A stretch of 64,000 bases of DNA from Macrostomum lignano (Eukaryota), in contig NIVC01000713.1 of assembly GCA_002269645.1 (NCBI GenBank), positions 124,001 through 188,000 of the forward strand. Reading direction: 5' to 3'. The notes below the pieces were generated by a model that ran no database searches, was not told the origin of the DNA, and worked only from the letters and a program-made list of their open reading frames with translations. This document shows, one piece after another, positions 249-55,705 of this stretch. Both the position numbers and the translations under genes were made by a program. The stretch's first letter is position 1, and each line of letters opens with the position of its first letter.

Positions 249-262
249 GATGTTGTACTGTT
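249..262. repeat. Target-site duplication, left copy (14 bp)
   Basis: GATGTTGTACTGTT, identical to 6019-6032; the neighbouring bases differ on both sides. Confidence 0.95.
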
Positions 263-372
263 TGACTTACTTGACTTAGCTGCAGGGTGGTCCGTAGACA
301 CAGCGGGGAGGCGAGGGTCGCCCATTCCGCTAGCCCCTGAAGGCCCGCAGACAGGCAGAGGCGTGGGGCCGG

Positions 373-3300
373 TCAGGGTGGTCCGCCGGTCCGTCCTGCA
401 GCGTGATCTTCCGTTGGGAAGAAACTGGCTCGTCTAGTCGCCCGAAGGAACTGGATGAGCCGTGGGATGCTGTCGGGCTGGCAAACCTCGTCAATGGACG
501 GGTTCGGCCCGAGGTAGCGTAGCCGGTCTCTGTTAAAGAAAGGACAGTGACAGACAAAGTGCTGAGCATCTTCATTGTCGCACTCGCAAAAGGGGCAAAT
601 TTCGCTCTCGAGGTCGCCTCGGAGGAAGCAGTGCCTGGCGAGGTAGCCATGGCCGGTAAGGGTCATGACAAGGGCTCGAATATCCTTCCGATTCTGGTTC
701 AGAAGGATGTTTCTGAGCCTGTGAGACGGGCAAGGAACCGCGGCACGAGATTGCCGGCAGTTTTGGGTGCCCGCCCATCTGTCCCTGTGGAGGGAGTCAG
801 CCCAGTCGTCGATCTGACGATTGATGACTGTCAAGGGCATAGGGACCAGGGGGGCAGGGCCGAAAAAAGAGCCAGAGCCGCCCCTCTTGGCGAGGGTGTC
901 TGCCAGCTCGTTCCCCGGAAACCCTGCGTGCCCTGGGATCCACTTCAGCCTGACAGTATTGCTTCTGGCCAGGAGGTTGAGCTGCCGGGCGCAGTCGGCG
1001 ACTGTCCGGGAGTTCGTTGTGGTGTGGCAAAGGGCCTGTAAGGCCGCTTGGCTGTCGGAGTGGATGACAATAGTCTTTCCTCTCGTAACCTTGGCGTTTA
1101 GCTCTGCAGCGCAAGAGCTGATGGCAAGGACTTCGTTCTGGAAGACTGTGGAGAGTCTACCAGTGTGCTGGGCATGCGTGGCAATTACGCGGCCGTTGAT
1201 GATGATGCAGACCCCAAAGCCGGCGCGACCGTCTTTGATGGATCCGTCCGTGTAGCAATGGACCTCCTGGAAATTCCAGTGGTCATTGGCAGCATCCCTA
1301 GAGGGGATGGTGACCTTGTAGCGCTGAAAGAGGTTGAGAGTGCGGGGTTCGCCGTCAGATAGGACGTGGAGCCCGCCGCTGTCTCTCAAGTCCTTGAGGC
1401 AGAGGTCAGCGTGGGGCAGAAGCTTGCGCTTAGCCATGGCCCTATGGGGCTGGATTCGAATGCCAGCGTCAGCTAGACGGCGGGCAGTCTTAGCCGCTTC
1501 CCTGCGGACAAAGATGTCCAGCGGAGGAATGTTGAGGAAGGCGTTGAGGCCATCGTAAGGAGCAGACGGAGGGGCGCTCATGATCGTGCGACAAGCGCGC
1601 CCTTGCGCTCTCCTGAGAGCCTCTAGACAGGTCTTTATCTGCAGGGCGCTAGCCCAGATCAGGCCGCCATACGAGATAGCGGGCCTAACCATTGCAGTGT
1701 AGATCCACCAGAGGCGCTTGGGGGTGAGCCCCCAGGTGGTGCCGACGGCCCTGCGCAATTGCGCGAGGACTGCGAAGGCCTTTTTGGCTTTTGTTTGAAC
1801 GTGGGGAGACCAGTTCAGCCTGTGGTCCAGGGTAATACCCAGACATTTAGTCTGCTTGCAGAAGGGGATTTCCCTTCCGTAAAGCGTGAGCGGCCGAATC
1901 TGCCACTTGGTCCTGCTGGTGAACATGATCGCTGCGGTCTTAGTCTCAGAGAGCCTTAAACCACAGCGGTCCGCCCATTGCTCAGCAGCGTAGATGAAGT
2001 TCTGAAGAAGGTCCCTGAGGGTATCAGGGGACGGACCAGATGCCACCGCGGTGACATCGTCCGCATATCCAACTTTCAGAATGGGGTCAGGCCGAACATC
2101 CCGGAGGAGCTCATCGATGACCATATTCCAGAGAACTGGAGACAGCACCCCACCTTGCGGGCTACCTTTGCAGACGGGGACCGTCCTCTGGTAGCCCAGC
2201 AGACTGGCGGTGGCCGTGCGATGGCTGATCATGTACATGATCCATCTGGTGAGATGTGAGTGCGTTAGCCTCTCACAAAGAGCTCTTCGGAACGCCTCAA
2301 AGAGGACGTTATCGAAGGCGCCAATGATGTCCAGGAAGATCCCCAGAGCAAAGCCACTACCAAGCACGGCCTTCTCGAGTTTATCGACCAGGACGTGCAG
2401 CGCGCTTTCAGTGGAGCGACCCGCCCGAAAAGCGTGCTGGTTCTCGCTGAGAGGTTTGTTCTTCAGCTCAACAGAGAGAAGGCGCCAAAGCACCAGTCTC
2501 TCCATCAGCTTGACCAGGGAGGAGGTCAAGCTGATCGGTCTGAAGGATTTGATAGAATGGTAGTCCGGGCGGCCTGGCTTAGGGATAAAGATCACCTTTG
2601 CCTCGGTCCATGCCTGCGGGACATAACCAAGCGTGATGCATGCCCGAAGAAGGCTGCAAAGTTTGCGCAGGAAGCCTGGGCATTTAACCGCCTCTCTTAG
2701 AAGGGCCGGTACAATGCCGTCGGGTCCTGGGGCTTTGAAAGGCTTGAAGGAATTTGCCGCTCTCACAATGCGGTCCTCCGTGATGATAGATGCAGCCAGC
2801 GCGTGACCTCCCTCCGAGTGATCCGGAGTGGTCTGGTTAGCTGGCTCGTTAGGGAAAAACGCAGTGAGCATTACATCAAGCGTTTCCCCTGGGTTGTCCG
2901 TGGACGTACCGTCGGTGCGTTTGACCGAGGAGAGCTTAGACATTTTGTCCAGCGTGAGCGCTTTCACAACTCTGGAGGTGGGGCGTGAGCCCTCTAGCTC
3001 CTCACAGTATTGTCGCCATTTTTGAGCCTTTGCATTCCTAACCTGCCTTTTAAACTCATGAATTGCTTCATGATAGGCGGTTTGGTCTGCAGGGCTCTTA
3101 GTTTTAGTTGCTCTGCGGTGGAGTCTCTTAGCCCTGCGACGGAGGTTGCCGAGCTCGGGATTCCACCACGGCGCCGATTTTTTCCCTTTATAGGCTTTTA
3201 AAGGGCAGGACGCCTCAAAGGCGGCGGTTAGCGTCTCTGTCAAAACAGTCGCGCACTCATCCGCCTCTCGGCACGACGTGATCGTGAATGGTTGGCCAGG

Positions 3301-4077
3301 AGACCGATGGAATTCCTTCAGGGCGAGCCCGAAGGTTTCCCAATCAGTATTTCTGGCGTTCCGTCTCCACATAACACGAGTTGCGCTACGCGCGGCCATT
3401 AGGTTGAAGGAGATGAACTTGTGATCCGATAGTGAGGACACTGGAAGCACCCGCCACGCCCCAATACTCTGGTAGAGTCTGGGCGTTGCGAGCGTAGCGT
3501 CGATCACCTCCGACCACCGTCCGTTGTCAAAGGTAGGGGTGGACCCAGAGTTGCAGAACTCGAGGGTCGTAGAGGCAACGTAGGCTAGGAGGTCTTCGCC
3601 TCTCTGATTAATGCCAGTGCTGCCCCAGTGAGTGTGGTGGGCGTTGATGTCGCCGGCAACCATGAGCTCGTAGTTTTTGGCAGAGCAGAGCTCTACCAGC
3701 GTAGCGAGGGCTCTGGGGACGACCGCAGCATCGCCTGGTAGGTAAACCGAGGCAATGAGGGTGGTCTTCCCAGGAAGAAGGTCCTCGGATTGGATGACGC
3801 AGATGTCCCTGTTGGACAGGTCCGATCTGAGCCACGCACTGAGCGTTTTGCTCGCAAAGATGCAAGCTCTGGGAGGCTGGTTGGCCTCGCGAGGGTAAGT
3901 ATAAAAACAATTGTAGCCAGCAGGGGCGTTTTGAGGCTTACCTCTGAGAGTCCAGGGTTCCTGGACGAGGATGAGCCCCGGCTTGTCGAGCTCGGCGTAA
4001 CGCATAAGGTTGACCGAGGCTGCGACGCAGTGCTGCAGATTAATCTGCAGGCAATGGATTCCCTGGTTGCTGATCAT
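373..4077 (-). CDS. LINE ORF2 polyprotein: apurinic-like endonuclease, reverse transcriptase, RNase H and C-terminal Cys/His motif
   Basis: APE motifs (LVQEPW, GDINAH, IDATL, SDH). RT motifs (KAPGPDG, FRPISL, DIIGAFD, PQGGVLSP, YADD). RNase H (YTDGS, NEVLAI, SDSQAAL, WIPGH, GNELAD). CPFC..EDAQHFVCHC. The first ATG is at 4077; the track starts at GTG 4083. Confidence 0.97.
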   Translation of the reverse strand: MISNQGIHCLQINLQHCVAASVNLMRYAELDKPGLILVQEPWTLRGKPQNAPAGYNCFYTYPREANQPPRACIFASKTLSAWLRSDLSNRDICVIQSEDLLPGKTTLIASVYLPGDAAVVPRALATLVELCSAKNYELMVAGDINAHHTHWGSTGINQRGEDLLAYVASTTLEFCNSGSTPTFDNGRWSEVIDATLATPRLYQSIGAWRVLPVSSLSDHKFISFNLMAARSATRVMWRRNARNTDWETFGLALKEFHRSPGQPFTITSCREADECATVLTETLTAAFEASCPLKAYKGKKSAPWWNPELGNLRRRAKRLHRRATKTKSPADQTAYHEAIHEFKRQVRNAKAQKWRQYCEELEGSRPTSRVVKALTLDKMSKLSSVKRTDGTSTDNPGETLDVMLTAFFPNEPANQTTPDHSEGGHALAASIITEDRIVRAANSFKPFKAPGPDGIVPALLREAVKCPGFLRKLCSLLRACITLGYVPQAWTEAKVIFIPKPGRPDYHSIKSFRPISLTSSLVKLMERLVLWRLLSVELKNKPLSENQHAFRAGRSTESALHVLVDKLEKAVLGSGFALGIFLDIIGAFDNVLFEAFRRALCERLTHSHLTRWIMYMISHRTATASLLGYQRTVPVCKGSPQGGVLSPVLWNMVIDELLRDVRPDPILKVGYADDVTAVASGPSPDTLRDLLQNFIYAAEQWADRCGLRLSETKTAAIMFTSRTKWQIRPLTLYGREIPFCKQTKCLGITLDHRLNWSPHVQTKAKKAFAVLAQLRRAVGTTWGLTPKRLWWIYTAMVRPAISYGGLIWASALQIKTCLEALRRAQGRACRTIMSAPPSAPYDGLNAFLNIPPLDIFVRREAAKTARRLADAGIRIQPHRAMAKRKLLPHADLCLKDLRDSGGLHVLSDGEPRTLNLFQRYKVTIPSRDAANDHWNFQEVHCYTDGSIKDGRAGFGVCIIINGRVIATHAQHTGRLSTVFQNEVLAISSCAAELNAKVTRGKTIVIHSDSQAALQALCHTTTNSRTVADCARQLNLLARSNTVRLKWIPGHAGFPGNELADTLAKRGGSGSFFGPAPLVPMPLTVINRQIDDWADSLHRDRWAGTQNCRQSRAAVPCPSHRLRNILLNQNRKDIRALVMTLTGHGYLARHCFLRGDLESEICPFCECDNEDAQHFVCHCPFFNRDRLRYLGPNPSIDEVCQPDSIPRLIQFLRATRRASFFPTEDHAAGRTGGPP

Positions 4078-4079
4078 TA

Positions 4080-5546
4080 TCACGCAGTTGGGGAATCGTT
4101 GAGCAGGTCATCCTCCTCCTTTTCAGTGGTGGGTGACCCGCAGACCTCCATGGGAGTTTCAGCGTCCTCAGCAGTTAGGGTGGCTGTGGAGTCCTCCGCG
4201 GACGTGAGCCCAGCGTGGACGTTACCGTCGCCTCTCCTGCGTGCTTCGGTGCTGTCACTGCCCGTCCCCTCTGCCTCGTCGGTCAGGTCGATGCGGGTGG
4301 CGCCAGCCTCCTGGTGAGTCACAGACTCGAACCAGTCGGTCGGAGCCTCCCCGCTTAGAGTCTGGCCTTCTGGCTGTTGGGGTGGAGCGCGAGAAGCGCG
4401 GGCCCGCTCACGATGCGCACGAAGGTTCTTGGCCTGGTCCAGCGCGCGCTGGATCAGGCCGGACCTCCGGGTGCTCCTGGCGGGTCTGCGATTGCGATTT
4501 CCGGTTTCAGCAGCGCGAACTGCCTTACCGGGCATAGGATCGGCCGTTTGCCTCGGCTTCTTTGCCGGAGGAGCCTGGGCCCCAGTTCCGGTTTCGGAAG
4601 CTTTGGCATTCTTGGCTTCATCAGCTTTCCGCTCCTCGCAACGGAGGATGGTCAGCTGAGTCAGACCAATATGAATTGTGGACTTAGGCGGCAAGCGCTT
4701 AGCCCAGTCATCAGAGAGCCCTAGGATCACCGTAGCCCCCTTCTCCTTGCGGGAAGTGGCGTGGTGTAGGAGCCCGTTGACCTTAAGGTCGGGGTGCAGC
4801 TTTAGCAATATTTGCCTAAGCTGATCTCCGGACTTAATGGCACTGCCGGCCGGGATCCAGACGCGAAAGCGCTGGGTCTTCTGTCGTTCGCCCTCGCTGG
4901 CGAAGACGAGCTTGCCGAGCTTCTTGGGCCAGTTCAGCTTTGGCAGAAGCTCGCGTAGATTGCGGCTGCTCTCCTCCGAGCTGCACCAGATGAAGATGCA
5001 GCCGTCGGTCTTGGCAGACTTGACCACGCTCACAGGGCGGCCCGCCAGGAGCTGGTCGATGAGCGCAGCATCGATGGTGCGCCAGGCACTGTCGAGCTCG
5101 TCGGCCGTGAGGTCCTGCTCTTCCCCGAAGACGATGACCGCCGGTTGGAGCTTGACCTTTGAGGCGTAGTTGGTGGCGGCGGTTCCCGAAGGCCCGGCCG
5201 CGCTTGTAGCAGGTATACTGGGTGGCTCACCAGCGGGGGTTGTATCCTGGGGGGCAGGGGTTGCTGTGGTTCCTTTCGGCCCAACAGCAGCCTCGCCCTC
5301 CCTAGGTTCCCCTTCCGCCGGTGGCCGGCCCGCAGTACCCCGTAGTCGCCGTCGCCGCTCGTTGCGGCGTTGGTTGCGGGTGCGTCGGGCTTCAGCGGAG
5401 GGCCCGGTTGCGCGTGCGGGCATGTCACCAGCCGAGCCGGCGGCAAGCCCATCTGCCCCCGGTGGGGCGGCGCTGGTGCCAGAGTCACCGGCCGGAGTTG
5501 CCGGGGCCCCGGCTTCAGCGGGGGTTAAAGAGGCGGATGACGCCAT
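4080..5546 (-). CDS. LINE ORF1 protein (488 aa), presumed RNA-binding/chaperone
   Basis: ATG-initiated ORF directly upstream of ORF2. Arg-rich N- and C-terminal segments, a central folded-looking region (RFRVWIP...ATVILGL) and an acidic tail; no CCHC knuckle visible. Confidence 0.9.
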   Translation of the reverse strand: MASSASLTPAEAGAPATPAGDSGTSAAPPGADGLAAGSAGDMPARATGPSAEARRTRNQRRNERRRRLRGTAGRPPAEGEPREGEAAVGPKGTTATPAPQDTTPAGEPPSIPATSAAGPSGTAATNYASKVKLQPAVIVFGEEQDLTADELDSAWRTIDAALIDQLLAGRPVSVVKSAKTDGCIFIWCSSEESSRNLRELLPKLNWPKKLGKLVFASEGERQKTQRFRVWIPAGSAIKSGDQLRQILLKLHPDLKVNGLLHHATSRKEKGATVILGLSDDWAKRLPPKSTIHIGLTQLTILRCEERKADEAKNAKASETGTGAQAPPAKKPRQTADPMPGKAVRAAETGNRNRRPARSTRRSGLIQRALDQAKNLRAHRERARASRAPPQQPEGQTLSGEAPTDWFESVTHQEAGATRIDLTDEAEGTGSDSTEARRRGDGNVHAGLTSAEDSTATLTAEDAETPMEVCGSPTTEKEEDDLLNDSPTA

Positions 5547-5767
5547 AGCTGAAAGCGGGAAGGAGTGAGCTGAGTCACAAAAGAAAGAGGAAAGAAGAAA
5601 AAGAAAAGGACCGCTAGCGACCGGACAACCCCCCGGCCTTCCAGCCCATCGGCACGGTCAAACACCTTAGGCATTAGGGGGTACGTTAAGCAGTACCACG
5701 GCCTGCAGGCTGGCAAGCCAGACCCGCATACCCAAATTCGGCCGAAGCCACTGGATGGGTCGCCAGC

Positions 5768-6018
5768 GTCGGAGCCCAGTCTGTCCAGCAGCCCTAGGGT
5801 CTGCCTTGAACACACGCGGGGACGAGTACCCTGGGTCGACTTGTGAAACAGCGTGAGGGGGGGGGTCTGCGGCTGCCAGTGGCAAATAGCGGGTGCAGAC
5901 CTCCCTCTCCAGCCTTGACCTGCTGAATATAGGGGCAGGCGTGAAGCATCGCAGACCGTAGCCCTTAGGCCTGGTCTGTCTCATACTTCACTGGCGTGCT
6001 GAATACACCTTCGCGTGC
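5768..6018 (-). ncRNA. HDV-like self-cleaving ribozyme at the LINE 5' end
   Basis: P1 GCACGCG (6018-6012)/CGCGUGU (5818-5812) with a G1-U wobble; P3 GGG/CCC; L3 UACUCGU; P1.1 AC/GU; P4 5809-5784; putative catalytic C5783; P2 CCCA/UGGG plus GUCG/CGAC. G1 abuts the TSD. Confidence 0.8.
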
Positions 6019-6032
6019 GATGTTGTACTGTT
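6019..6032. repeat. Target-site duplication, right copy (14 bp)
   Basis: GATGTTGTACTGTT, identical to 249-262. Confidence 0.95.
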
Positions 6033-6158
6033 AATATTTGTTCAAATTGTCAATGGGGGGGGGGTCAATTCCCCTCACCTTCCGCTGACTCTCTTGAGCA
6101 GGCACACAAGCGCGCGGATACGTTTGCAGTCATACGCACAGGCACACACTCACACAGA

Positions 6159-6326
6159 CTTTATTTATCATTAGGCATGTACACTTCCCTGTGCCTCAAG
6201 GGGGTTGGCACTCAAGGGCGTTAATTGCACGAGCAGAGCCAAGCCGAGATCCCAATTTAGCCCCAAATTATTGTGATTGCACTGGGAATCGAGCCTGGGC
6301 CGCTAGACCACTGGGCTACGGCCCCC
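6159..6326 (-). mobile_element. tRNA-derived SINE, copy 1
   Basis: Pol III A box TAGCCCAGTGG (6318-6308) and B box GGCTCGATTCC (6295-6285), followed by a ~125-bp body ending CCTAATGATAAATAAAG; homologous to 27316-27503. Confidence 0.7.
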
Positions 6327-7574
6327 TTGCACACGACCAGACTGCCAGCCTTTCCAAGACAACTATTGCTACATATGGAGTAACTAAAATACACATGCAG
6401 CTAAGACTACGTCAGCTCACAGGGTGCAGAAAGTGCTAGTATAAATCTAAAAAGCAAGAAAACAAGACTAGACAAGATGCCGATTTGTTCAGCTTTCGAG
6501 GTCACACTCGGCCGGCTCTTCCTGCCGGCAGCATGCGGGAGCTCCGATAATTTGTGTTGACACTGGGGCTGGCCTGGCAGGATCCCGGAGGTAACAAGGG
6601 GACACGCCATGCATGGCAAAAACCAAATTGGGAGCGGTTAATTGCATTAGCAGGCTGGCTGCTGGGCCTTAGGCCACCGACATCAAGTCTTTGGCCTCCG
6701 ATGCTTCCTTCCTTCTTCATCCCCACTGATAATTTTGGTGCTTTCAATACTTTGAAGAGGCGAATCGAAGTGAGGTTAAATAGCCGTAGGTCATGAATGT
6801 TCAGCGGGAAATGGAGGCTCATGCATCGCTTCTCCACTGGTCAAGAAGTACGCGTGGATCCTGCAAGGTTCACTGCACTGCACTGCCGCAAAAAATCAAA
6901 TAAAAACTAATAATAAAATCATAAAAATTATGGAAATGTAGTTTGCGCCTTCACACTAGAACATAATATATTAGGGGTACTTTTGCACAAATTTTGTGTC
7001 AAGACATTTTTTTATAAATAGCCACCACGAGAGTTCAGCGCTGGTTTTCATCTTTTTGCACCTCGATTTTGTTTATTTCATTACGGAAGGGAATTATAAA
7101 TAAATTCCTTGACACCACCTCCAGCGTCTTTCAAGGTACAAACGAAACCTCAAAGGAAAGCTACATCAGGTAAACTGTACAGTTCAAATGACAATGCACT
7201 GCGGTAGATAAAATTTCACCCAGGGTTATGGATTAAGAGTTAATTGTTAAGACAGCAGATTCTACTATGACCGGAAGTTAATGTTATGTTAATGTTAATG
7301 TGTTGTTCATGTAGCAACTGGGCAATAAAACATGAAAAGAAGTCCTTCTCTTTAGAACATGTAGAAACAGCGTAACAGTGTCCCTATTGGCATCCAAATC
7401 CGATGTACTTTATTACAGTTGTAATATCCGCCATCAGCATTACGAGTGATCCCAGAAAACTCTACAAGACACAAGTGCTCAAGAGGCGATGCGGTAGGAA
7501 ACCAGCGCAACAGTCAACATGCAGCAAGTCGCAAGCAAGAACCAGCAGCAACAGGCTGTTTGCTGGCAGTCAAT

Positions 7575-18964: not shown

Positions 18965-21867
18965 ATGAGCATGAAAAACTTGAGCGTTTTGGCTGTAGCA
19001 GGCGCAGGCAGCTGGGGGCATCACTACAGTCGGAATGAGCGAATTGTCTATGGCTGCCTTGGAGCGGCCCTCGGCTGCTACATCACGGCTGTTAACATGG
19101 CCATTCTGATAGCGTTCGCTCGCAACCGGCAGCTCAATAGGGTGCCGGGACACTCGCTGATCCTCTGGTTGATGGTTGCCAGTGATGTCATGATCGGCTG
19201 CTGCGCGCTGCCAGGTTAGTTAGTTAGTTAGTTAGCTATATTCGCACATGATCCTACTGACACATGATCCTATATTCGCACATGATCCTACTGACACATG
19301 ATCCTATATTCGCACATGATCCTACTGACACATGATCCTATATTCGCACATGATCCTACTGACACATGATCCTATATTCGCACATGATCCTACTGACACA
19401 TGATCCTATTTTCGCACATGATCCTACTGACACATGATCCTACTGACACATGATCCTACTGACACATGATCCTACTGACACATGATCCTACTGACACATG
19501 ATCCTACTGACACATGATCCTACTGACACATGATCCTACTGACACATGATCCTATATTCGCACATGATCCTACTGACACATGACCCTATATTCGCACATG
19601 ATCCTACTGACACATGATCCTATATTCGCACATGATCCTACTGACACATGATCCTATATTCGCACATGATCCTACTGACACATGATCCTATATTCGCACA
19701 TGATCCTACTGACACATGATCCTATATTCGCACATGATCCTACTGACACATGATCCTATATTCGCACATGATCCTACTGACACATGATCCTACTGACACA
19801 TGATCCTACTGACACATGATTCTACTGACACATGATCCTAATGACACATGATTCTACTGACACATGATCCTAGTGACACATGATCCTACTGACACATGAT
19901 TCTACTGACAGATAATTCTACTGACACATAATTCTACTGACAGATGATCCTACTGACACATGATCCTACTGACACATGATCCTAATGACACATGATTCTA
20001 ATGACACATGATCCTAATGACACATGATTCTACTGACACATGATCCTAATGACACATGATTCTACTGACACATGATCCTACTGACACATGATTCTACTGA
20101 CACATGATCCTAATGACACATGACTCTACTGACACATGATCCTACTGACACATGATTCTACTGACAGATAATTCTACTGACACATGATTCTACTGACACA
20201 TGATTCTACTGACACATGATCCTACTGACACATGATCCTACTGACACATGAGCCTACTGACACATGATCCTACTGACACATGATTCTACTGACACATGAT
20301 CCTAATGACACATGATCCTACTGACACATGATCCTACTGACACATGATCCTACTGACACATGATCCTACTGACACATGATTCTACTGACAGATAATTCTA
20401 CTGACACATGATTCTACTGACACATGATTCTACTGACACATGATCCTACTGACACATGATCCTACTGACACATGATCCTACTGACAGATAATTCTACTGA
20501 CACATGATTCTACTGACACATGATCATACCGACACTCCGCCCCATCCCCGCCAGGTTACCTGATTGACACGCTAAGCCAGCCAGTCTGGCCGCTGCCAAT
20601 GTGGACCTGCGACCTGTGGATTCTGTGCGATTATGTCAGCACCAATGTTGGGGTTCTGAGCGTCACTGCGGTGGCATTCGACCGGTTTTTGGCAACCAAC
20701 TGCGTGTTTCTGCACAAGCGCTGGATGCACAGGACGAACCAGCTGCGGCTCTGTGCGGGTCTCTGGTCCTTCACCGTGCTAAGGAATTTCCTCGTGTTTC
20801 CCGTCTGGGTGATCGCCACCGACTATCGGGCCAAGCAAATGCGGATGAGCAATGGCACCGAGGTCGCGTGCTCGCACCCGATTTATGCGAACACCTCGGC
20901 AGCTCTGGCTCAGCGGACGGTGGCCCTGTACCTGCCTATCGCCCTGCTGCTGTTTTTCTATGCCGCTGTGGTGTTCCGGATTTTACAGAGCGCCAGGCGG
21001 ACAGGAACTGGCGGATGCCGAGGAAGTCTCAGGGTGAGATTTTGAGGGTTTGGCATGGAAGTTTCAGGGTGAGACTTTTGAGGGCTTTTTGATCGACGTC
21101 TCATCAGACACTAGATGCCATGTATTATTTGTTAGAATGGTTAAGCCCTTGTTAGGGTCATAATTAACACTGCTAGACACAATTGCATCACCCTTGTGTC
21201 TAACACCTGTTAGACACAAGGGTCGCTAACACCTGTTAGACATTCCTTCCAAACCCTACAGAAGAACATCACAACAGCCAACGGTCCACCGAGTGACGAC
21301 CCGGCTAGCGGCCGCTGCACCGTACAGGCAACTTCAGCAGCGCCCAGGCATCGAGCCAGCAGCGCCACGGCTCAGCAGCCGAACAGATTCGGCAAGTCTT
21401 TCCGCACGGTCACCTGCGTGCTGACGTCATTCCTGCTGGCCAACCTGCCGTGGCACGTGCTGGACAACCTGATCATGACAGGGCGCAGCAGCATTAAGAA
21501 AACGGACTCAATCTACATCACCTCCTGGATCATGTGCTACGCCAACGCCTGCCTCAATCCGGTGTTCTACACCTTCATGAACCAGAAGTACCGCCGGCTG
21601 CTGCTCCAGAGAGCCGTGGTCGGCTGCCTCGGTCGGGGCAGCGGCGGCGGCGGCACCGGCACCCCGTCAGCTTCGGCGATGCCCGTCAGAAGCCGGTCAA
21701 ATCAGCTGACTCCGCTACGACTCAACGACGGTGAGAGGATCAACGACAACTACGTCGAGCCGGGATGTTGGTGTCGGCGAAGGCAATGGCCGGTGGAAAA
21801 ATCGGCAGTCGGTGAGGCGCGAGACGCAGCCGAGCTGCTGGTGGAGTGCGTCGTTACAACGGTCTGA
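18965..21867 (+). CDS. Class A (rhodopsin-like) GPCR, aminergic/muscarinic-histamine-like, about 444 aa. Exons 18965-19214, 20555-21033, 21262-21867
   Basis: TM1 ..NMAILIAF, TM2 ASDVMIG, WPLPMWTCDLWILCDYV (Asp3.32), DRF, TM5 YLPIALLLFFY, TM6 LPW, TM7 NACLNPVFY. Splice phases are consistent. Confidence 0.9.
19236..20525. repeat. 16/18-bp minisatellite (GACACATGATCCTACT / ATATTCGCACATGATCCT), GPCR intron 1
   Basis: About 80 units. Confidence 0.93.
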
Positions 21868-23680: not shown

Positions 23681-24220
23681 ATATAGCATATTCCTTGATC
23701 AGAACGAAAGCATGAGTAAACAGTAACATCTATGTTTATAAGTGTTAGAATTTGCAGCCCAGCCAAAAAATCTCATTTGCACCAGCAGCGAATGCCCCGA
23801 GTTGAGAGCTGTTCGTTCGTTCTCAACCTCGGAGAGAAAAACCCGAGCATTCTGCCCCTTCCTACTGCAAACTCAATTTGCTAAACATTTTCGAGAAAAT
23901 TCTCCCCGACACGCAATGGAGGAACTGGAACAGGGGGGGATAGGAAAGAATCGAGTCTTAAGAGACTTTAGAGCAGGGCTTAGCAAAATTTTCGACAATA
24001 ATCTAAATGAATGCATCAGCTAAAATGCAAACAAACAGATGCACAAAAACTGATGCTTGTTTTTTTATTTTTGTTAGAAAAATCTTCAAAAGTGTCTCTG
24101 TTAATGAATGATGCACAACATTTTCAATTAAAAAGACTGAATTCAAGCATTGTTAAGTGTAGCATGCAGTCAGGTCTGCTAGGAGTTGCTGCTTCTTGCT
24201 CTCGTTTTACAGTAGCATTG

Positions 24221-27200
24221 GCTACAGACTCTCCAGCTACAGACTCTACAGCTACAGACTCTGCAGCTACAGACTCTCCAGCTACAGACTCTACAGCTAC
24301 AGACTCTACAGCTACAGACTCTACAGCTACAGACTCTACAGCTACAGACTCTACAGCTACAGACTCTCCAGCTACAGACTCTACAGCTACAGACTCTGCA
24401 GCTACAGACTCTACAGCTACAGACTCTACAGCTACAGACTCTACAGCTACAGACTCTACAGCTACAGACTCTACAGCTACAGACTCTACAGCTACAGACT
24501 CTACAGCTACAGACTCTACAGCTACAGAATCTACAGCTACAGACTCTACAGCTTCAGACTCTACAGCTACAGACTCTCCAGCTACAGACTCTACAGCTAC
24601 AGACTCTCCAGCTACAGACCCTACAGCTACAGACTCTACAGCTACAGACTCTACAGCTACAGACTCTCCAGCTACAGACTCTACAGCTACAGACTCTCCA
24701 GCTACAGACTCTACAGCTACAGACTCTGCAGCTACAGACTCTACAGCTACAGACTCTCCAGCTACAGACTCTACAGCTACAGACTCTACAGCTACAGACT
24801 CTACAGCTACAGACTCTCCAGCTACAGACTCTCCAGCTACAGACTCTACAGCTACAGACTCTGCAGCTACAGACTCTACAGTTACAGACTCTACAGCTAC
24901 AGACTCTACAGCTACAGACTCTACAGCTACAGACTCTCCAGCTACAGACTCTCCAGCTACAGACTCTACAGCTACAGACTCTGCAGCTACAGACTCTACA
25001 GCTACAGACTCTACAGCTACAGACTCTACAGCTACAGACTCTCCAGCTACAGACTCTGCAGCTACAGACTCTACAGCTACAGACTCTGCAGCTACAGACT
25101 CTACAGCTACAGAATCTCCAGCTACAGACTCTCCAGCTACAGACTCTACAGCTACAGACTCTGCAGCTACAGACTCTACAGCTACAGACTCTCCAGCTAC
25201 AGACTCTACAGCTACAGAATCTCCAGCTACAGACTCTCCAGCTACAGACTCTGCAGCTACAGACTCTACAGCTACAGACTCTACAGCTACAGACTCTACA
25301 GCTACAGACTCTACAGCTACAGAATCTCCAGCTACAGACTCTACAGCTACAGACTCTCCAGCTACAGACTCTACAGCTACAGACTCTGCAGCTACAGACT
25401 CTACAGCTACAGACTCTACAGCTACAGACTCTACAGCTACAGAATCTCCAGCTACAGACTCTACAGCTACAGACTCTACAGCTACAGACTCTGCAGCTAC
25501 AGACTCTACAGCTACAGACTCTGCAGCTACAGACTCTACAGCTACAGACTCTACAGCTACAGACTCTACAGCTACAGACTCTACAGCTACAGACTCTACA
25601 GCTACAGAATCTACAGCTACAGACTCTACAGCTACAGACTCTACAGCTTCAGACTCTACAGCTACAGACTCTCCAGCTACAGACTCTACAGCTACAGACT
25701 CTCCAGCTACAGACTCTACAGCAACAGACTCTCCAGCTACAGACTCTACAGCTACAGACTCTACAGCTACAGACTCTACAGCTACAGACTCTGCAGCTAC
25801 AGACTCTACAGTTACAGACTCTACAGCTACAGACTCTACAGCTACAGACTCTACAGCTACAGACTCTCCAGCTACAGACTCTACAGCTACAGACTCTCCA
25901 GCTACAGACTCTACAGCTACAGACTCTGCAGCTACAGACTCTACAGCTACAGACTCTACAGCTACAGACTCTACAGCTACAGACTCTCCAGCTACAGACT
26001 CTGCAGCTACAGACTCTACAGCTACAGACTCTGCAGCTACAGACTCTACAGCTACAGAATCTCCAGCTACAGACTCTCCAGCTACAGACTCTACAGCTAC
26101 AGACTCTGCAGCTACAGACTCTACAGCTACAGACTCTGCAGCTACAGACTCTACAGCTACAGACTCTCCAGCTACAGACTCTACAGCTACAGAATCTCCA
26201 GCTACAGACTCTCCAGCTACAGACTCTGCAGCTACAGACTCTACAGCTACAGACTCTACAGCTACAGACTCTACAGCTACAGACTCTACAGCTACAGAAT
26301 CTCCAGCTACAGACTCTACAGCTACAGACTCTCCAGCTACAGACTCTACAGCTACAGACTCTGCAGCTACAGACTCTACAGCTACAGACTCTCCAGCTAC
26401 AGACTCTGCAGCTACAGACTCTACAGCTACAGACTCTACAGCTACAGACTCTACAGCTACAGAATCTCCAGCTACAGACTCTCCAGCTACAGACTCTCCA
26501 GCTACAGACTCTACAGCTACAGAATCTCCAGCTACAGACTCTCCAGCTACAGACTCTACAGCTACAGACTCTACAGCTACAGACTCTGCAGCTACAGACT
26601 CTGCAGCTACAGACTCTACAGCTACAGACTCTACAGCTACAGACTCTGCAGCTACAGACTCTACAGCTACAGACTCTACAGCTACAGACTCTACAGCTAC
26701 AGACTCTCCAGCTACAGACTCTCCAGCTACAGACTCTCCAGCTACAGACTCTCCAGCTACAGACTCTACAGCTACAGACTCTACAGCTACAGACTCTACA
26801 GCTACAGAATCTCCAGCTACAGACTCTACAGCTACAGACTCTACAGCTACAGACTCTCCAGCTACAGACTCTACAGCTACAGACTCTCCAGCTACAGACT
26901 CTACAGCTACAGACTCTACAGCTACAGACTCTACAGCTACAGACTCTCCAGCTACAGACTCTCCAGCTACAGACTCTGCAGCTACAGACCCTACAGCTAC
27001 AGACTCTACAGCTACAGACTCTACAGCTACAGACTCTCCAGCTACAGACTCTCCAGCTACAGACTCTCCAGCTACAGACTCTCCAGCTACAGACTCTACA
27101 GCTACAGACTCTGCAGCTACAGACTCTGCAGCTACAGAATCTCCAGCTACAGACTCTACAGCTACAGACTCTCCAGCTACAGACTCTACAGCTACAGACT

Positions 27201-27282
27201 CTACAGCTACAGACTCTACAGCTACAGAATCTCCAGCTACAGACTCTCCAGCTACAGACTCTCCAGCTTCAGACTCTACAGC
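24221..27282. repeat. 15-bp tandem array (GCTACAGACTCTACA), about 204 units
   Basis: Homogeneous array with A/C/G variants at one position; reads as ATDST in one frame. Confidence 0.95.
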
Positions 27283-27315
27283 TAGATTCTGATCCTCAGT
27301 TACCTGAGGCCCTAA

Positions 27316-27542: not shown

Positions 27543-30500
27543 CTAAACATCCCCCACAGCAACGCAAATCTCTCCGCTCTCGAGCACCGATCTGAAGCGA
27601 GTAACTCGGATTTTCAAATCCTTCAAAGCCGAATTCGCTGGCATCATCAGCAGCCGCTCCAGACAGGCGACCGAGTCCGGGGCAGACAGGCTCGAGTCAA
27701 CGTTCACTGAGTCCAGGCTGTGCTTGAGCACGCACTGATCGGCCAACTCGCTGACGACACTCCAGTTAGCGGCTCTGCTGCCTCCTGACTGCTGACTGAA
27801 GTCAGTGGGTTTGATAAGTACATCGATAATGTAGCTGTCAAACTGAGAGCCATTTCATGGGGCAATCTGGCATCCTTCCACTGTGGAATCTGGCATCATT
27901 CCTTAGTGGAATCTGGCATCATTCCATCATGGAATCTGACATCACTCCATAGTGGAATCTGACATCACTCCTTAGTGGAATCTGGCATCATTTCTTAGTG
28001 GAATCTGACATCATTCCTTAGTGGAATCTGACATCATTCCATCATGGAATCTGGCATCACTCCTTAGTGGAATCTGACATCATTCCATCATGGAATCTGA
28101 CATCACTCCTTAGTGGAATCTGGCATCATTCCTTAGTGGAATCTGACATCATTCCTTAGTGGAATCTGACATCACTCCTTAGTGGAATCTGACATCATTC
28201 CATCATGGAATCTGGCATAACTCCTTAGTGGAATCTGACATCATTCCATAGTGGAATCTGGCATCACTCCTTAGTGGAATCTGAAATCATTCAACTGTGG
28301 AATCTGGCATCATGCCATCATGGAACCTGGCATCATGCCATCATGGAATCTGGCATCATTCCATCATGGAATCTGGCATCATTCCATCATGGAATCTGGC
28401 ATCATTCCACTGTGGAATCCGGCATCATTCCATCATGGAATCTGACATCATTCCATCATGGAATCTGGCATAACGTTGACAGAAAAGCGCCTGGCCACAC
28501 CTGTCAGATGCCGCAGACCGATCACTGCCCATCTCGCTATCGCCGGCATCCAATCGAATCAAGGCTTCGAGCAGCTGGAAGGCCGGATTCCTGGCCGGCA
28601 CCACAACCGGCCAGTCCGGCTTGGTAGGCGATCTGGTCACGTGACCGCTGGAGTCTTCCACAGCCACAGACAGCTTAGCCAGGTCGTATTTGCCTGTTAA
28701 ATCGAACCGATTAAAAGATTTACGAAATCGCCTGTCCGAATACAGGCGGCGGTACAAGCCGGCCAGTCCGGACACCAGCCGCAGCAGGCAGGCCTCGTAC
28801 TCGGCCAGGGTCAACGCGCCGTGCACGCTCGAATGCCTCACAACTTGAGCTCCGTGCAGCAGAATTGAAACGGCCCTTTCTAGGCGGCATATTCTATCAA
28901 ACTGAGGCTTGATTGAGGCCTGAAGTTACAGAAAAACTTTTAGATGCCGATATGTATCGAAAGTAACTTTATATATGTGAAAAAAATGTGTTTTCAAAAA
29001 CTACTTTTCTAAACTTATCGATTGTAATTCGATTTGATTTGATTTCGATTTTAAAATGCGCTTAATGCTACTTAGAGCCGAAAATTCGCATCTAGCACCA
29101 CTATAAGAGAACAGCAGGAGCAAAACATGCTTGAATTGGAAATTTTAAAGTAACTCGCCACCAAAATCGGCACTCACATTTTATGGTTTTTTCATACACC
29201 GTTTTCACTCTAGAACCCGGCACCCATTTCACATTGGAACCAGGCACCAGTTCCACTCTGGAACCCGGCACCAGTTCCACTCTGGAACCCGGCACCAATT
29301 CCACTCTGGAACCCGGCACCAGTTTCACTCTGGAACCCGGCACCAATTCCACTCTGGAACCCGGCACCAGTTCCACTCTGGAACCCGGCACCCATTTCAC
29401 ATTGGAACCAGGCACCAATTCCACTCTGGAACCCGGCACCAGTTTCACTCTGGAACCCGGCACCAGTTCCACTCTGGAACCCGGCACCAATTCCACTCTG
29501 GAACCCGGCACCAGTTCCACTCTGGAACCCGGCACCAATTCCACTCTGGAACCCGGCACCAGTTCCACTCTGGAACCCGGCACCAATTCCACTCTGGAAC
29601 CCGGCACCAATTCCACTCTGGAACCCGGCACCAATTCCACTCTGGAACTCGGCACCAGTTTCACTCTGGAACCCGGCACCAATTCCACTCTGGAACCCGG
29701 CACCAGTTCCACTCTGGAACTCACATCATCCGGTAGCAGTGCGGCCAGCCAAGCCTCTGGCACGTCGGCAGGATTCAAAAGCCTGTCGGAGTTCATCACG
29801 CCGACGCCGGTTTTACCGGGCGCGAACACGACTCTCCGACCCCTGAGCCGGTCGCCCAGGCCCGGCCGGGTGCTCAGCAGAGTCTCCAGGGCGCTCAGGC
29901 TGCGCAGGTAGTGGCCGAGAGTCCAGTCCGACTGCCACCGAATGCTGGCAGCCCCTGTCCGGTTGGCCAGCACCGCTTCTAACCGGCCGCAGGCGTCCGA
30001 GATTTGGTTGGAGCGCGCCGATTTTGAGCGCGCCTCAGGCGCCACCGAGACCAGCCAGCTTGACAGGTCGCTGCTGGCCGGCCGACCGGCGCTTCTGGGC
30101 GACTCTGAGCGCCAGTGGAATGCAGACTGCGGTGGCTCTTGGGGCCTGCTGGCTGACTGGGCTGGGGAGAGGGGCAATTGGTGCTGGCATTGCTTGTCGG
30201 TTGTCTGTCTGTCTGTCTGTATGCCTGTCTGTCTGTCTGCATGTCTGTCTGTGTTTCTGCCTGCCTGTCTGTCTATCTGCCTGTCTGTGTGTCTGTCTGT
30301 CTGTCTGCCTGCCTGTCTATCTATCTGTCTGTCTGTCTGTCTGTCTGTATGCCTGCCTGCCTGTCTGTCTGCCTGTCTGTCTGCATGTCTGCCTGCCTGT
30401 CTGTGTCTCTGTCTGCCTGTCTGTATGCCTGTCTGTCTGTCTGCCTGCCTGCCTGTCTGTCTGTCTGTCTGTCTGCCTGCCTGCCTGTCTGTCTGTCTGT

Positions 30501-30983
30501 CTGCCTATCTGTCTACCAATATGCCTGTCTGTCTGCCTATCTGTCTACCAATATGTCTGTCTGTCTGTCTGCCTGTCTGTGTGTCTGTCTGTCTGCCTGT
30601 TCGTCACAGCTCTCACCAGCAGCTCCGGCAGAAGCGCTGCCGTCCAGCTGTCCGAGAATCTGCCTCACAGAATCGTCCAACCGGCCGCTGCTGGCCGTCA
30701 CGCTGAGAGTCGCGGCCTCCCCGGAAGCGCCGGCCCGTTTCAAAAAGAACTGAAATGAGTGACGGGAGCCGCGAACCACCCGGCCCTGGCTGAGGTCGCT
30801 CAGCAGCAGGTGCAGGCGCTGCAGGGAAGCCAAGTTCACCGCCTGCACCTTCGGCTCGGTCTCGAACAGATCCGGGTGCACCGCCTGCAGCAGCGGCTTC
30901 AGCGATTTCAGCGCCTTCGAGTAGGTCATGCAGCAGCGGCGGCAGATTCTCAGCGCCAAGTTCGGAGTGTTGGCGAGCAGCAT
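27543..30983 (-). CDS. TCAIM: T-cell activation inhibitor, mitochondrial-like (DUF4460/DUF4461), about 491 aa. Exons 30983-30617, 30161-29725, 28919-28501, 27795-27543
   Basis: LKPLLQAVHPDLF..VNLASLQRL, IRWQSDW, LLHGAQV..LTLAEY, SVLESGEICV, and an Arg-containing N-terminal presequence. The last acceptor position is less certain. Confidence 0.88.
27868..28472. repeat. About 23-bp minisatellite (GTGGAATCTGACATCATTCCTTA), TCAIM intron
   Basis: About 26 units. Confidence 0.88.
29203..29722. repeat. 24-bp minisatellite (CTCTGGAACCCGGCACCAGTTCCA), TCAIM intron
   Basis: About 21 units starting at the GTGAGT donor; source of the LEPGTSST/SRVELVPG ORFs. Confidence 0.92.
30202..30600. repeat. (CTGT/CTGC)n microsatellite, TCAIM intron
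   Basis: Tetranucleotide array. Confidence 0.92.
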
Positions 30984-33908: not shown

Positions 33909-33910
33909 GC

Positions 33911-33946
<36 letters not shown>

Positions 33947-33972
33947 TAACAGACAGACAGACTGACAGACAC

Positions 33973-34003
<31 letters not shown>

Positions 34004-34067
34004 CTAAGACAGACAGACAGACAGACAGACACTAAGACAGATAGACAGACAGACAGACCGACAGACT

Positions 34068-34147
<80 letters not shown>

Positions 34148-34162
34148 CTAAGACAGACAGAC

Positions 34163-34217
<55 letters not shown>

Positions 34218-34272
34218 CACAGGTAGACAGACAGACAGACACACAGACAGACAGACAGACAGACACTAACAG

Positions 34273-34304
<32 letters not shown>

Positions 34305-34325
34305 TCAGACAGACAGACATGACAC
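33909..34325. repeat. (CAGA)n microsatellite
   Basis: Tetranucleotide array. Confidence 0.93.
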
Positions 34326-34497
34326 ACAGAAGGTTAAAGATTAAAAACGGCAGAGCCCAAAAGAAAAAAAGCAAAGCCAGAAAAATCAGCAATCACTCAG
34401 CCAATCCAGACACACAGATTCCTTAGAGCTTGCAGCTACCAACATCTCGGCAATGATCAGCCAGAGAGCAGCCAGAGAGCACAACAGACAACAAAGG

Positions 34498-49384: not shown

Positions 49385-55705
<6,321 letters not shown>

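What the first reader, a model, noticed from the sequence alone, without database searches (positions are those of the whole stretch)
5768..6018. HDV-like ribozyme whose cleavage site coincides exactly with the 5' end of an intact LINE
Seen on the minus strand, all core HDV-like helices are present. P1 is GCACGCG (6018-6012) with CGCGUGU (5818-5812), including the G1-U wobble. P2 is CCCA/UGGG, extended by GUCG/CGAC across a small loop. P3 is GGG (5831-5829)/CCC (5821-5819) around L3 UACUCGU. P1.1 replaces the usual CC/GG with a compensatory AC/GU pairing (L3 with G5811, U5810). P4 is UC..GGCAG..CUGCU..GA (5809-5784), directly followed by C5783-A-G-A. J1/2 is a 171-nt insert with its own stems (GUGAAGUAU/AUGCUUCAC, CAGACC/GGUCUG, GGUCUGC/GCAGACC). 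G1 is the first base after the 14-bp TSD. Established: HDV-like ribozymes process the 5' ends of R2 and several other non-LTR clades. Inference: this is a promoter-independent, self-excising element with a possibly undescribed A-U P1.1 variant. Caveat: an extra C (5779) in J4/2 could compete with the first P3 pair.
Basis: partly seen in the sequence, partly recalled or inferred. Interest (0 to 1): 0.88.

Follow-up and report, generated by a model that had tools for sequence, protein, structure and literature searches.

The report
HDV-like ribozyme heading a flatworm LINE
The first 251 bases of an intact jumping gene (LINE) of the flatworm Macrostomum fold into the double-pseudoknot shape of a hepatitis-delta-type self-cutting RNA. 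The predicted cut falls exactly at the element's first base, which is a device already known from other LINEs, so this is a new example and not a new mechanism.

Summary
On the minus strand a 5,756-bp LINE (263-6018) lies between perfect 14-bp target-site duplications. It has intact ORF1 and ORF2 (endonuclease, reverse transcriptase, RNase H). Its closest protein match (98% identity) is from Macrostomum lignano.

A strict HDV-like descriptor hits only this site in the 64-kb window. With the cleavage site fixed at the 5' end defined by the duplications, only 2 of 20,000 shuffled 5'UTRs satisfy the descriptor.

Two relatives from other datasets (ORF2 61% and ORF1 65% identical) keep the same architecture. 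Of 40 pairs that fall in the same alignment columns, 13 changed on both sides, including pairs in P1, P2, P1.1 and a helix that closes J1/2. One relative contig begins exactly at the homologue of G1.

Caveats:
- Cleavage is untested.
- No Rfam model matches.
- The joiner after the putative catalytic C is not conserved.
- The G1-U wobble is G-C in the relatives.
- The "A-U P1.1 variant" is not conserved, and P1.1 variation is already documented.
- More distant relatives of this LINE group show no such motif.

Verdict: a new member of a known kind (ribozyme-terminated LINEs). Interest is moderate.

The parts
6019..6032 (-). Target-site duplication, upstream copy (AACAGTACAACATC). C6019 is the -1 nucleotide of the predicted cleavage site.
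   Evidence: Exact 14-mer found only twice in the window, 0 expected by chance.
249..262 (-). Target-site duplication, downstream copy.
263..6018 (-). Full-length LINE, 5,756 bp: 5'UTR, ORF1, ORF2, 3'UTR. It ends in short TAAGTCA-type repeats and has no poly(A).
   Evidence: The closest protein is 98% identical and from Macrostomum lignano.
5768..6018 (-). Whole HDV-like ribozyme candidate, 251 nt.
6012..6018 (-). P1 5' strand GCACGCG. G6018 is G1, and cleavage is predicted between C6019 and G6018.
   Evidence: Pairs with 5818-5812. Two compensatory changes relative to L002. Present in the unconstrained MFE of nt 1-209.
5841..6011 (-). J1/2 peripheral domain, 171 nt. A closing helix 'P1.2' (6008-6006/5998-6001 with 5843-5852) encloses four hairpins: 5991-5941 (which contains the 5978-5952 hairpin), 5940-5918 and 5905-5860.
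   Evidence: P1.2 and the hairpins show compensatory changes relative to L002. The third and fourth hairpins were compared by eye with L001 and L002.
5832..5840 (-). P2 5' strand: GUCG-A-CCCA.
   Evidence: Pairs with 5778-5768. Compensatory changes in both halves.
5819..5831 (-). P3 (GGG/CCC) with L3 UACUCGU. U at L3 position 1 and G at position 6 are invariant in all three sequences.
   Evidence: P3 never varies, so covariation says nothing about it.
5812..5818 (-). P1 3' strand CGCGUGU.
5810..5811 (-). P1.1 3' strand GU. It pairs with C5826 and A5827 of L3.
   Evidence: Both pairs differ in L002 (U-A and C-G). L001 has C-G plus U.U.
5784..5809 (-). P4 hairpin: UC-AA-GGCAG-A-CC CUAG GG-CUGCU-G-GA.
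   Evidence: A hairpin of different length and sequence sits at the same place in L001 and L002.
5779..5783 (-). J4/2, CAGAC. C5783 is the putative catalytic cytosine and the only C conserved here in all three sequences.
   Evidence: The bases after the C are not conserved (AGAC, GUG, UGC).
5768..5778 (-). P2 3' strand: UGGG-CUC-CGAC.
5547..5767 (-). Rest of the 5'UTR. It is also conserved with L001 and L002 and includes a hairpin, ACCCA...UGGGU.
4080..5546 (-). ORF1, 488 aa, with only a weak sub-threshold DUF4780 match.
373..4083 (-). ORF2, 1,236 aa: AP-endonuclease, reverse transcriptase, RNase H, and a C-terminal Cys/His motif.

Best explanation
The 5'-terminal 251 nt of this Macrostomum LINE RNA form a large HDV-like self-cleaving ribozyme.

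Proposed mechanism:
1. The element is transcribed as part of a longer RNA (read-through or host transcript), or from a promoter of its own.
2. The nested part (P1, the J1/2 domain, P3) folds first. P2, P1.1 and P4 then complete the double pseudoknot.
3. The conserved C5783 and a Mg2+ ion catalyse attack of the 2'-OH of C6019 on the C6019|G6018 phosphodiester.
4. The released element RNA starts at G6018 with a 5'-OH. Reverse transcription of this RNA to its end gives copies whose first base is G1 at every insertion site.
5. The closing helix of J1/2 probably holds the outer ends of P1 and P2 together, as shown for other large HDV-like ribozymes.

Shown here: the anatomy, the exact match with the element boundary, and conservation with compensatory changes. 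Inferred: catalysis, which C is catalytic, and the biological role in 5' processing and possibly in translation of the uncapped RNA.
For: - All helices are present in the canonical order.
- G1 is the first base after an exact 14-bp duplication.
- The strict descriptor has a single hit in 128 kb of both strands, and 2 of 20,000 anchored shuffles pass.
- Two relatives share the architecture: L002 (ORF2 61% identical) and L001 (ORF1 65% identical).
- 40 of the window's 56 pairs fall in the same columns of a structure-blind MAFFT alignment as the pairs defined separately in L002.
- On those 40 pairs, 98.9% of cells are paired and 13 pairs changed on both sides. Slid controls give 30-45% paired and 0-2 such pairs. 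The changed pairs comprise 2 in P1, 4 in P1.2, 2 in P2 and both P1.1 pairs.
- Unconstrained MFE folds of nt 1-209 (window) and 1-196 (L002) contain P1, P3 and the J1/2 hairpins.
- L3 keeps the U and G that form the reverse wobble of HDV-like ribozymes (PMC3774820).
- The L002 contig starts exactly at the homologue of G1.
- Literature precedent exists for each unusual feature: ribozymes at the 5' ends of R2, R4, Dong, baggins, RTE and L1Tc (PMC3774820, PMC6765202, PMC3185411); J1/2 of 216-498 nt (PMC3774820); and a J1/2 helix that activates the core (PMC4908430).
Against: - No cleavage data exist.
- No Rfam family matches, even at E<=10 on the 96-nt core.
- The three or four bases after the putative catalytic C are not conserved (AGAC, GUG, UGC) and lack the two adenosines typical of canonical members (own knowledge).
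- The window copy has one extra base there.
- The base opposite G1 is U only in the window copy. It is C in L001 and L002.
- The two base pairs at the foot of P4 are not kept in L001 (A.A).
- Only three sequences support the covariation, and one of them lacks P1. The 40 pairs counted were selected because they pair in both sequences.
- The full-length pseudoknot-free MFE prefers another long-range helix.
- About 24 more distant relatives that have 5'UTR sequence show no motif.
Confidence: 0.78

Rival explanations
1. The fold is real and conserved but is not, or is no longer, catalytic. On this reading it is a structured 5'UTR module used for translation initiation, for binding the element's own proteins, or as DNA for an internal promoter, and it only resembles an HDV-like ribozyme.
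For: The J4/2 sequence is not conserved and is non-canonical, G1-U is replaced by G1-C in relatives, and no Rfam match exists. The 5'UTR downstream of the fold is conserved too. HDV-like folds in R2 also act in translation and protein binding (PMC6765202).
Against: A non-catalytic role does not explain several features: P1 starts at the very first base of the element, a C is kept at the junction between P4 and J4/2, and the U and G of L3 and a P1.1 pairing are kept through changes on both sides. Active natural ribozymes with a non-G +1 base and a one-pair P1.1 are known (PMC4035085, PMC3185411).
Confidence: 0.12
2. The 5' end at G6018 is set by an internal promoter that starts transcription at +1, as in many I- and jockey-type LINEs. 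The ribozyme would then be at most a back-up for read-through transcripts, giving a dual system like Pr77/L1TcRz.
For: A defined 5' end shared by copies (TSD, L002 contig start) is equally expected from a fixed start site. L1Tc combines both functions in its first 77 nt (PMC3383444). No host gene reading into the element was found upstream, where the flank is satellite-rich.
Against: A promoter alone does not explain RNA-level compensatory changes in long-range helices. This reading is compatible with the best explanation and is not exclusive of it.
Confidence: 0.1
3. The resemblance is due to chance in a G+C-rich 5'UTR.
For: With J1/2 allowed up to 350 nt, shuffled windows give 0.4-1.9 strict hits, and a relaxed descriptor passes 0.7% of anchored shuffles.
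Against: Only 2 of 20,000 anchored shuffles pass the strict descriptor. There are 13 pairs with changes on both sides, against 0-2 in slid controls. The same fold appears at the same place in two relatives.
Confidence: 0.03

Closest known systems
HDV-like ribozymes at the 5' ends of non-LTR retrotransposons: R2, R4, Dong, baggins, RTE, and also SART and R6 (Ruminski et al. 2011, recalled from memory; PMC3774820; PMC6765202)
   Same: A double-pseudoknot ribozyme forms the first nucleotides of the element RNA. In R4, Dong, baggins and L1Tc the cleavage is at the element's 5' junction. P1 lies wholly inside the element. J1/2 can be large, 216-498 nt in silkmoth R2.
   Different: The host is a macrostomid flatworm and the element is a non-site-specific LINE with endonuclease, RT and RNase H domains and a DUF4780-like ORF1. 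Its clade was not determined here. J4/2 is not conserved. G1 pairs with C in two of the three sequences. No match to the Rfam models.
L1TcRz / Pr77 of trypanosomatid L1Tc/ingi elements (PMC3185411, PMC4035085, PMC3383444)
   Same: The ribozyme belongs to an endonuclease/RT/RNase H LINE that inserts at many sites, and cleavage is at +1. The +1 pair and P1.1 deviate from the canonical form (one or two pairs of varied composition).
   Different: L1TcRz is compact (77 nt) and doubles as a promoter. Here the ribozyme spans 251 nt with a 171-nt J1/2 domain, and promoter activity is unknown.
Large HDV-like ribozymes with a structured J1/2 (drz-Agam-2 family, PMC4908430)
   Same: A helix closes J1/2 next to P1 and P2 (called P1.2, the 'pinch'). 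Here that helix is GUG..CAGC/GCUG..CAC in the window copy and a 9-bp helix in L002, with four compensatory changes.
   Different: The domain here is a conserved four-hairpin module, not a single helix. Its effect on rate is untested.
Mammalian CPEB3 ribozyme (sequence features recalled from memory)
   Same: L3 begins with U and has G at position 6. A GU dinucleotide after P1 forms P1.1 with one C-G pair plus a weak second position (U.U, as in L001). P4 starts directly after P1.1.
   Different: CPEB3 is a compact intronic ribozyme with a canonical purine-rich J4/2 and is not part of a mobile element.

Membership tests
HDV-like self-cleaving ribozymes | Nested double pseudoknot with strands in the order P1, J1/2, P2, P3, L3, P3', P1', P1.1, P4, J4/2, P2' | tested here: met
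   All strands are present in that order with no spacer between P3', P1' and P1.1. The same holds in L002, and in L001 where its sequence exists.
HDV-like self-cleaving ribozymes | Helices maintained by selection (compensatory changes in P1, P2, P1.1) | tested here: met
   13 of 40 pairs changed on both sides and 98.9% of cells are paired. Slid controls give 0-2 such pairs. Only three sequences were available. P3 is invariant and P4 varies in length.
HDV-like self-cleaving ribozymes | Cleavage 5' of the first nucleotide of P1, usually G1 in a G-U wobble | tested here: inconclusive
   G1 is the element's first base and pairs with U5812. In L002, and by inference in L001, the partner is C. Active natural variants with other +1 pairs exist (PMC4035085). 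Cleavage itself was not observed.
HDV-like self-cleaving ribozymes | L3 with the conserved U and G (reverse wobble) and the base(s) that form P1.1 | tested here: met
   L3 is UACUCGU, UUCUCGU and UCUCCGU in the three sequences. U at position 1 and G at position 6 are invariant. The role of these bases is stated in PMC3774820.
HDV-like self-cleaving ribozymes | Catalytic cytosine at the start of J4/2, about three nucleotides before the P2 3' strand | tested here: inconclusive
   A C is conserved at that place in all three sequences, 3 nt before P2' in L001 and L002 and 4 nt before it in the window copy. The following bases are not conserved and are not the usual adenosines.
HDV-like self-cleaving ribozymes | Match to a curated Rfam model of the family (a convenience test, not a defining feature) | tested here: not met
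   No match at gathering score in the window or in 19 loci, and none at E<=10 on 601 nt or on the 96-nt core. The models describe compact subfamilies, and I do not expect them to span a 171-nt J1/2 or to score pseudoknot pairs.
HDV-like self-cleaving ribozymes | Mg2+-dependent self-scission giving a 2',3'-cyclic phosphate and a 5'-OH | not testable with these tools
   This needs a transcription/cleavage assay.
Non-LTR (LINE) retrotransposon, AP-endonuclease type with RNase H | Target-site duplication, ORF2 with endonuclease and reverse transcriptase domains, no LTRs | tested here: met
   14-bp duplication. Pfam Exo_endo_phos_2, RVT_1 and RNase_H all above their cut-offs. Both ORFs are open.
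Non-LTR (LINE) retrotransposon, AP-endonuclease type with RNase H | Assignment to a named clade (I, LOA, Nimb, Ingi, ...) | not tested
   No reference sequences of named clades were at hand. Relatives carry DUF4780 in ORF1.

The most novel reading that the evidence does not exclude
This subfamily uses an HDV-like core with an atypical active-site joiner: variable J4/2 without the usual adenosines, and G1 paired with C or U. The conserved 171-nt four-hairpin J1/2 module is more than a clamp. It could be a platform for the element's own proteins or a regulatory switch, and helix X (5996-5991 with 5766-5761) could be the alternative inactive state.
Probability: 0.2. Interest if true: 0.6.

Novelty: new member of a known kind. 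Interest (0 to 1): 0.42.

Why it matters
- It extends ribozyme-terminated LINEs to a free-living flatworm used as a regeneration and germline model. I found no paper linking Macrostomum to an HDV-like ribozyme.
- It concerns a dispersed LINE with an RNase H domain, not an rDNA-specific one.
- The element looks young and intact, so it offers a testable natural example of a large HDV-like ribozyme with a conserved peripheral domain and an unusual J4/2.
- For genome annotation, it explains why full-length copies have a sharply defined 5' end.
- It does not change the current picture of how such elements work.

Tried and rejected
- **Rfam scans** of the window, the 5' region, the 96-nt core and 19 related loci found no ribozyme family.
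- **Protein searches with ORF1**, alone and as an alignment, returned a single relative. Low-complexity words filled the candidate list.
- **Exact look-up of the window's ORF1** found nothing on record.
- **P0003**, the second-closest ORF2, had no retrievable DNA.
- **Metagenome scan with an ORF2 alignment** gave 80 loci, all 38% identical or less. None showed homology to the 5'UTR by nhmmer. None gave a credible descriptor hit: strict hits sat at noise level and mostly inside ORFs, and a relaxed scan of 21 candidate 5'UTRs gave 3 hits against about 1 expected. Three further contigs also had none.
- **DNA pattern scans** of viral and prokaryotic genome collections gave nothing, or five chance matches in G+C-rich bacteria with no fold.
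- **ORF1 and ORF2 scans of viral contigs** found nothing.
- **Other copies in the window:** there are none.
- **Full-length pseudoknot-free folding** does not show P1. Only folding of the first ~200 nt does.
- **Helix X** (CGCCAG/CUGGCG) was considered as an extension of P2. I rejected it as a conserved feature because in L002 the equivalent pairing overlaps the P2 3' strand.
- **C5779 as the catalytic base** was rejected because L001 has G there.
- Comparisons use features stated in the cited papers or described in words. My first notebook entry does contain a 7-letter L3 string of the HDV ribozyme recalled from memory, and it cannot be edited.

Full report
**What is there**

Read on the minus strand, the window holds a 5,756-bp non-LTR retrotransposon at 263-6018.
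- It is flanked by an exact 14-bp direct repeat, AACAGTACAACATC, at 6019-6032 and 249-262. The repeat occurs nowhere else in the window, and none is expected by chance.
- The bases next to both copies differ, so the duplication is exactly 14 bp and the element begins at G6018.
- ORF1 (5546-4080, 488 aa) has no Pfam match above threshold, only a weak DUF4780 hit.
- ORF2 (4083-373, 1,236 aa) has AP-endonuclease, reverse-transcriptase and RNase H domains. Both frames are open.
- The 3' end has short TAAGTCA-type repeats and no poly(A).
- The closest protein, 98% identical over the part it covers, is from Macrostomum lignano. The window is therefore from that flatworm or a very close relative.
- The element is G+C-rich (57-63%) and sits in an A+T-richer region made almost entirely of minisatellites.
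- There is no second copy in the window.

**Check of the observation**

- P1: G6018-G6012 with C5818-U5812, 7 bp, G1-U.
- P3: GGG/CCC around L3 UACUCGU.
- P1.1: C5826-G5811 and A5827-U5810.
- P4: 5809-5784, followed by C5783.
- P2: CCCA/UGGG plus GUCG/CGAC.

I wrote a descriptor for the HDV-like architecture. Its requirements were:
- a P1 of 6-7 bp starting with G;
- a 3-bp P3;
- a 7-nt L3 with U first and G sixth;
- both P1.1 pairs;
- a P2 of at least 4 bp abutting P3;
- a C placed 2-4 nt before the P2 3' strand;
- a J1/2 of up to 350 nt.

On both strands of the window it hits only this site. That is not significant by itself, because dinucleotide-shuffled windows give 1.9 hits on average, or 0.43 when a 7-bp P1 is required. 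The reason is that a long J1/2 offers many partners for P1.

The informative test fixes G1 at the 5' end, which the duplications define independently. Then 2 of 20,000 shuffled 5'UTRs satisfy the strict descriptor and 133 of 20,000 satisfy a relaxed one. Part of the strict descriptor was set after I had seen the sequence, so these numbers are indicative.

**Relatives and covariation**

Protein searches found two close relatives whose contigs reach into the 5'UTR.
- L002 is a Logan contig of run ERR14788467, with ORF2 61% identical.
- L001 is a JGI metagenome contig, with ORF1 65% identical, and it is cut off inside J1/2.

Both keep the same architecture:

| Feature | Window | L001 | L002 |
|---|---|---|---|
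| Core (P3, L3, P3', P1', P1.1) | GGG UACUCGU CCC CGCGUGU GU | GGG UUCUCGU CCC CGCGAGC GU | GGG UCUCCGU CCC GCAGGC AG |
| P1 | GCACGCG/CGCGUGU | 5' strand missing | GCCUGC/GCAGGC |
| P1.1 | C-G plus A-U | C-G plus U.U | U-A plus C-G |
| P2 | GUCG-A-CCCA / UGGG-CUC-CGAC | GCCG-A-CCCAAA / UUUGGG-CAA-CGGC | GCCG-C-CUCAGA / UCUGAG-CAA-CGGC |

In P1, positions 3 and 4 changed on both sides between the window copy and L002.

It is GUG..CAGC with GCUG..CAC in the window copy, and a 9-bp GCAGGGCGC/GCGCUCUGC in L002.

I defined the pairs separately in the window copy and in L002. Forty of the window's 56 pairs fall in the same columns of a MAFFT alignment that knows nothing of structure. The rest are P3, displaced by one gap column, and P4, which differs in length.

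On those 40 pairs, 98.9% of cells are standard pairs and 13 pairs changed on both sides. Sliding the partners by 1-3 columns gives 30-45% paired and 0-2 such pairs. The counted pairs were selected because they pair in both sequences, which inflates the percentage paired. That selection does not create compensatory changes.

Unconstrained folding supports the same picture.
- Nt 1-209 of the window copy and 1-196 of L002 each give P1, P3 and the J1/2 hairpins in the minimum-energy structure. In L002 the closing helix appears as well.
- Folding the full 250-260 nt without pseudoknots loses P1. This is expected for a pseudoknotted RNA and fits co-transcriptional folding.

**The 5' end in another genome**

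The L002 contig begins exactly at the homologue of G1, yet it runs about 530 nt past the conserved 3' terminus (CCCTGCAGCTAAGTCA) into unrelated sequence. One explanation is that the assembly broke at a repeat boundary shared by several copies. The other is that the contig is a read-through transcript that starts at the processed end. Either way, the same first base defines the element in a second species. A fixed transcription start would give the same result.

**What does not fit the canonical picture**

- No Rfam family matches at gathering score, nor at E<=10 on 601 nt or on the 96-nt core, nor in 19 related loci. In my judgement the Rfam models describe compact subfamilies, and they cannot score pseudoknot pairs, so this weighs little.
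- The bases after the conserved C are AGAC, GUG and UGC in the three sequences. Canonical members have a purine-rich joiner ending in two adenosines (own knowledge). C5779 cannot be the catalytic base, because L001 has G at that position.
- G1 faces U only in the window copy and faces C in the two relatives. Natural active HDV-like ribozymes with other +1 pairs, and with one or two P1.1 pairs of varied composition, are described for the L1Tc group (PMC4035085, PMC3185411). These deviations lower confidence but do not exclude activity.
- The two pairs at the foot of P4 are not kept in L001 (A.A).
- At this particular insertion, C6019 can pair with G5811 and lengthen P1 at the expense of P1.1. 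This kind of site-dependent damping is reported for L1Tc and R2 (PMC3185411).

**How far the motif extends**

I examined 80 metagenome loci with ORF2 38% identical or less, four other contigs and three more.
- None shows homology to this 5'UTR.
- Descriptor hits are at noise level.

On present evidence the ribozyme is confined to the Macrostomum-type subfamily. Alternatively it has diverged beyond my descriptor, or many of the contigs lack the true 5' end.

**Comparison with what is known**

HDV-like ribozymes that cut at or near the 5' junction are established for R2, R4, Dong, baggins, RTE and L1Tc (PMC3774820, PMC6765202, PMC3185411). From memory, they are also established for SART and R6 (Ruminski et al. 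2011).
- J1/2 loops of 216-498 nt occur in silkmoth R2 (PMC3774820).
- A helix in J1/2 that brings P1 and P2 together speeds large HDV-like ribozymes by up to three orders of magnitude (PMC4908430).
- The U and G of L3 form a conserved reverse wobble (PMC3774820).

The finding is therefore a new member of a known kind. The 'A-U P1.1 variant' is neither conserved in the family nor outside the documented variation. I found no open-access paper that links Macrostomum or other free-living flatworms (apart from a planarian R2 in PMC3774820) to such a ribozyme.

**Verdict**

I put the probability at about 0.78 that this is a functional HDV-like ribozyme that defines the element's 5' end. The main rival is a conserved but non-catalytic structured 5'UTR, at about 0.12. 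A promoter-defined 5' end may coexist with the ribozyme. Interest is moderate: a clean, testable example in a new host and LINE lineage with some unusual core features, but no new principle.

Noticed in passing
window 7793-58068, for example 24221-27284, 50368-54357, 36637-38734, 19245-20535: Outside the LINE the window is a mosaic of more than 30 different mini- and microsatellite arrays. Examples are a 15-bp unit in 204 copies, a 28-bp unit in 142 copies and a 24-bp unit in 88 copies. The 15-bp array produces a spurious 1,093-aa ORF at 24011-27292.
   Followed up: partly
window 30202-30600 and 33910-34330: A (TGTC)n array and a (CAGA)n array 3.4 kb apart are reverse complements of each other. 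The repeat finder reported them as 250-nt inverted repeats of about 82% complementarity. It is unclear whether they bound anything.
   Followed up: no
window 5996-5991 with 5766-5761 (minus strand): CGCCAG in J1/2 can pair with CUGGCG just 3' of P2, and this helix appears in the full-length minimum-energy fold. In L002 the equivalent pairing overlaps the P2 3' strand. It may be an alternative inactive conformer, or it may be chance.
   Followed up: partly
window 5547-5767 (minus strand): The 5'UTR between the ribozyme and the ORF1 AUG is also conserved with L001 and L002, including a hairpin ACCCA...GGCUUCGGCC...UGGGU. Its function is unknown. A role in translation of an uncapped RNA is one possibility.
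   Followed up: no
window 6019 and 5811: The -1 base of this insertion (C6019) can pair with G5811. This would extend P1 by one pair and compete with P1.1, so this copy may cleave less well than copies in other flanks.
   Followed up: partly
window 4080-4083: The ORF1 stop and the first possible ORF2 start overlap (GUGA). L001 has a similar 4-nt overlap. This suggests ORF2 is translated by termination-reinitiation.
   Followed up: no
L002 1 and 5950-6492: The relative contig starts exactly at the homologue of G1 but continues about 530 nt beyond the element's 3' terminus into sequence with an open frame on the opposite strand.
   Followed up: partly
L004, L005, L093, L094, L095 (ORF1): Distant relatives of this LINE group carry Pfam DUF4780 in ORF1. 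The window's ORF1 matches it only weakly (E=0.023). This domain of unknown function may be the ORF1 core of this LINE lineage.
   Followed up: partly
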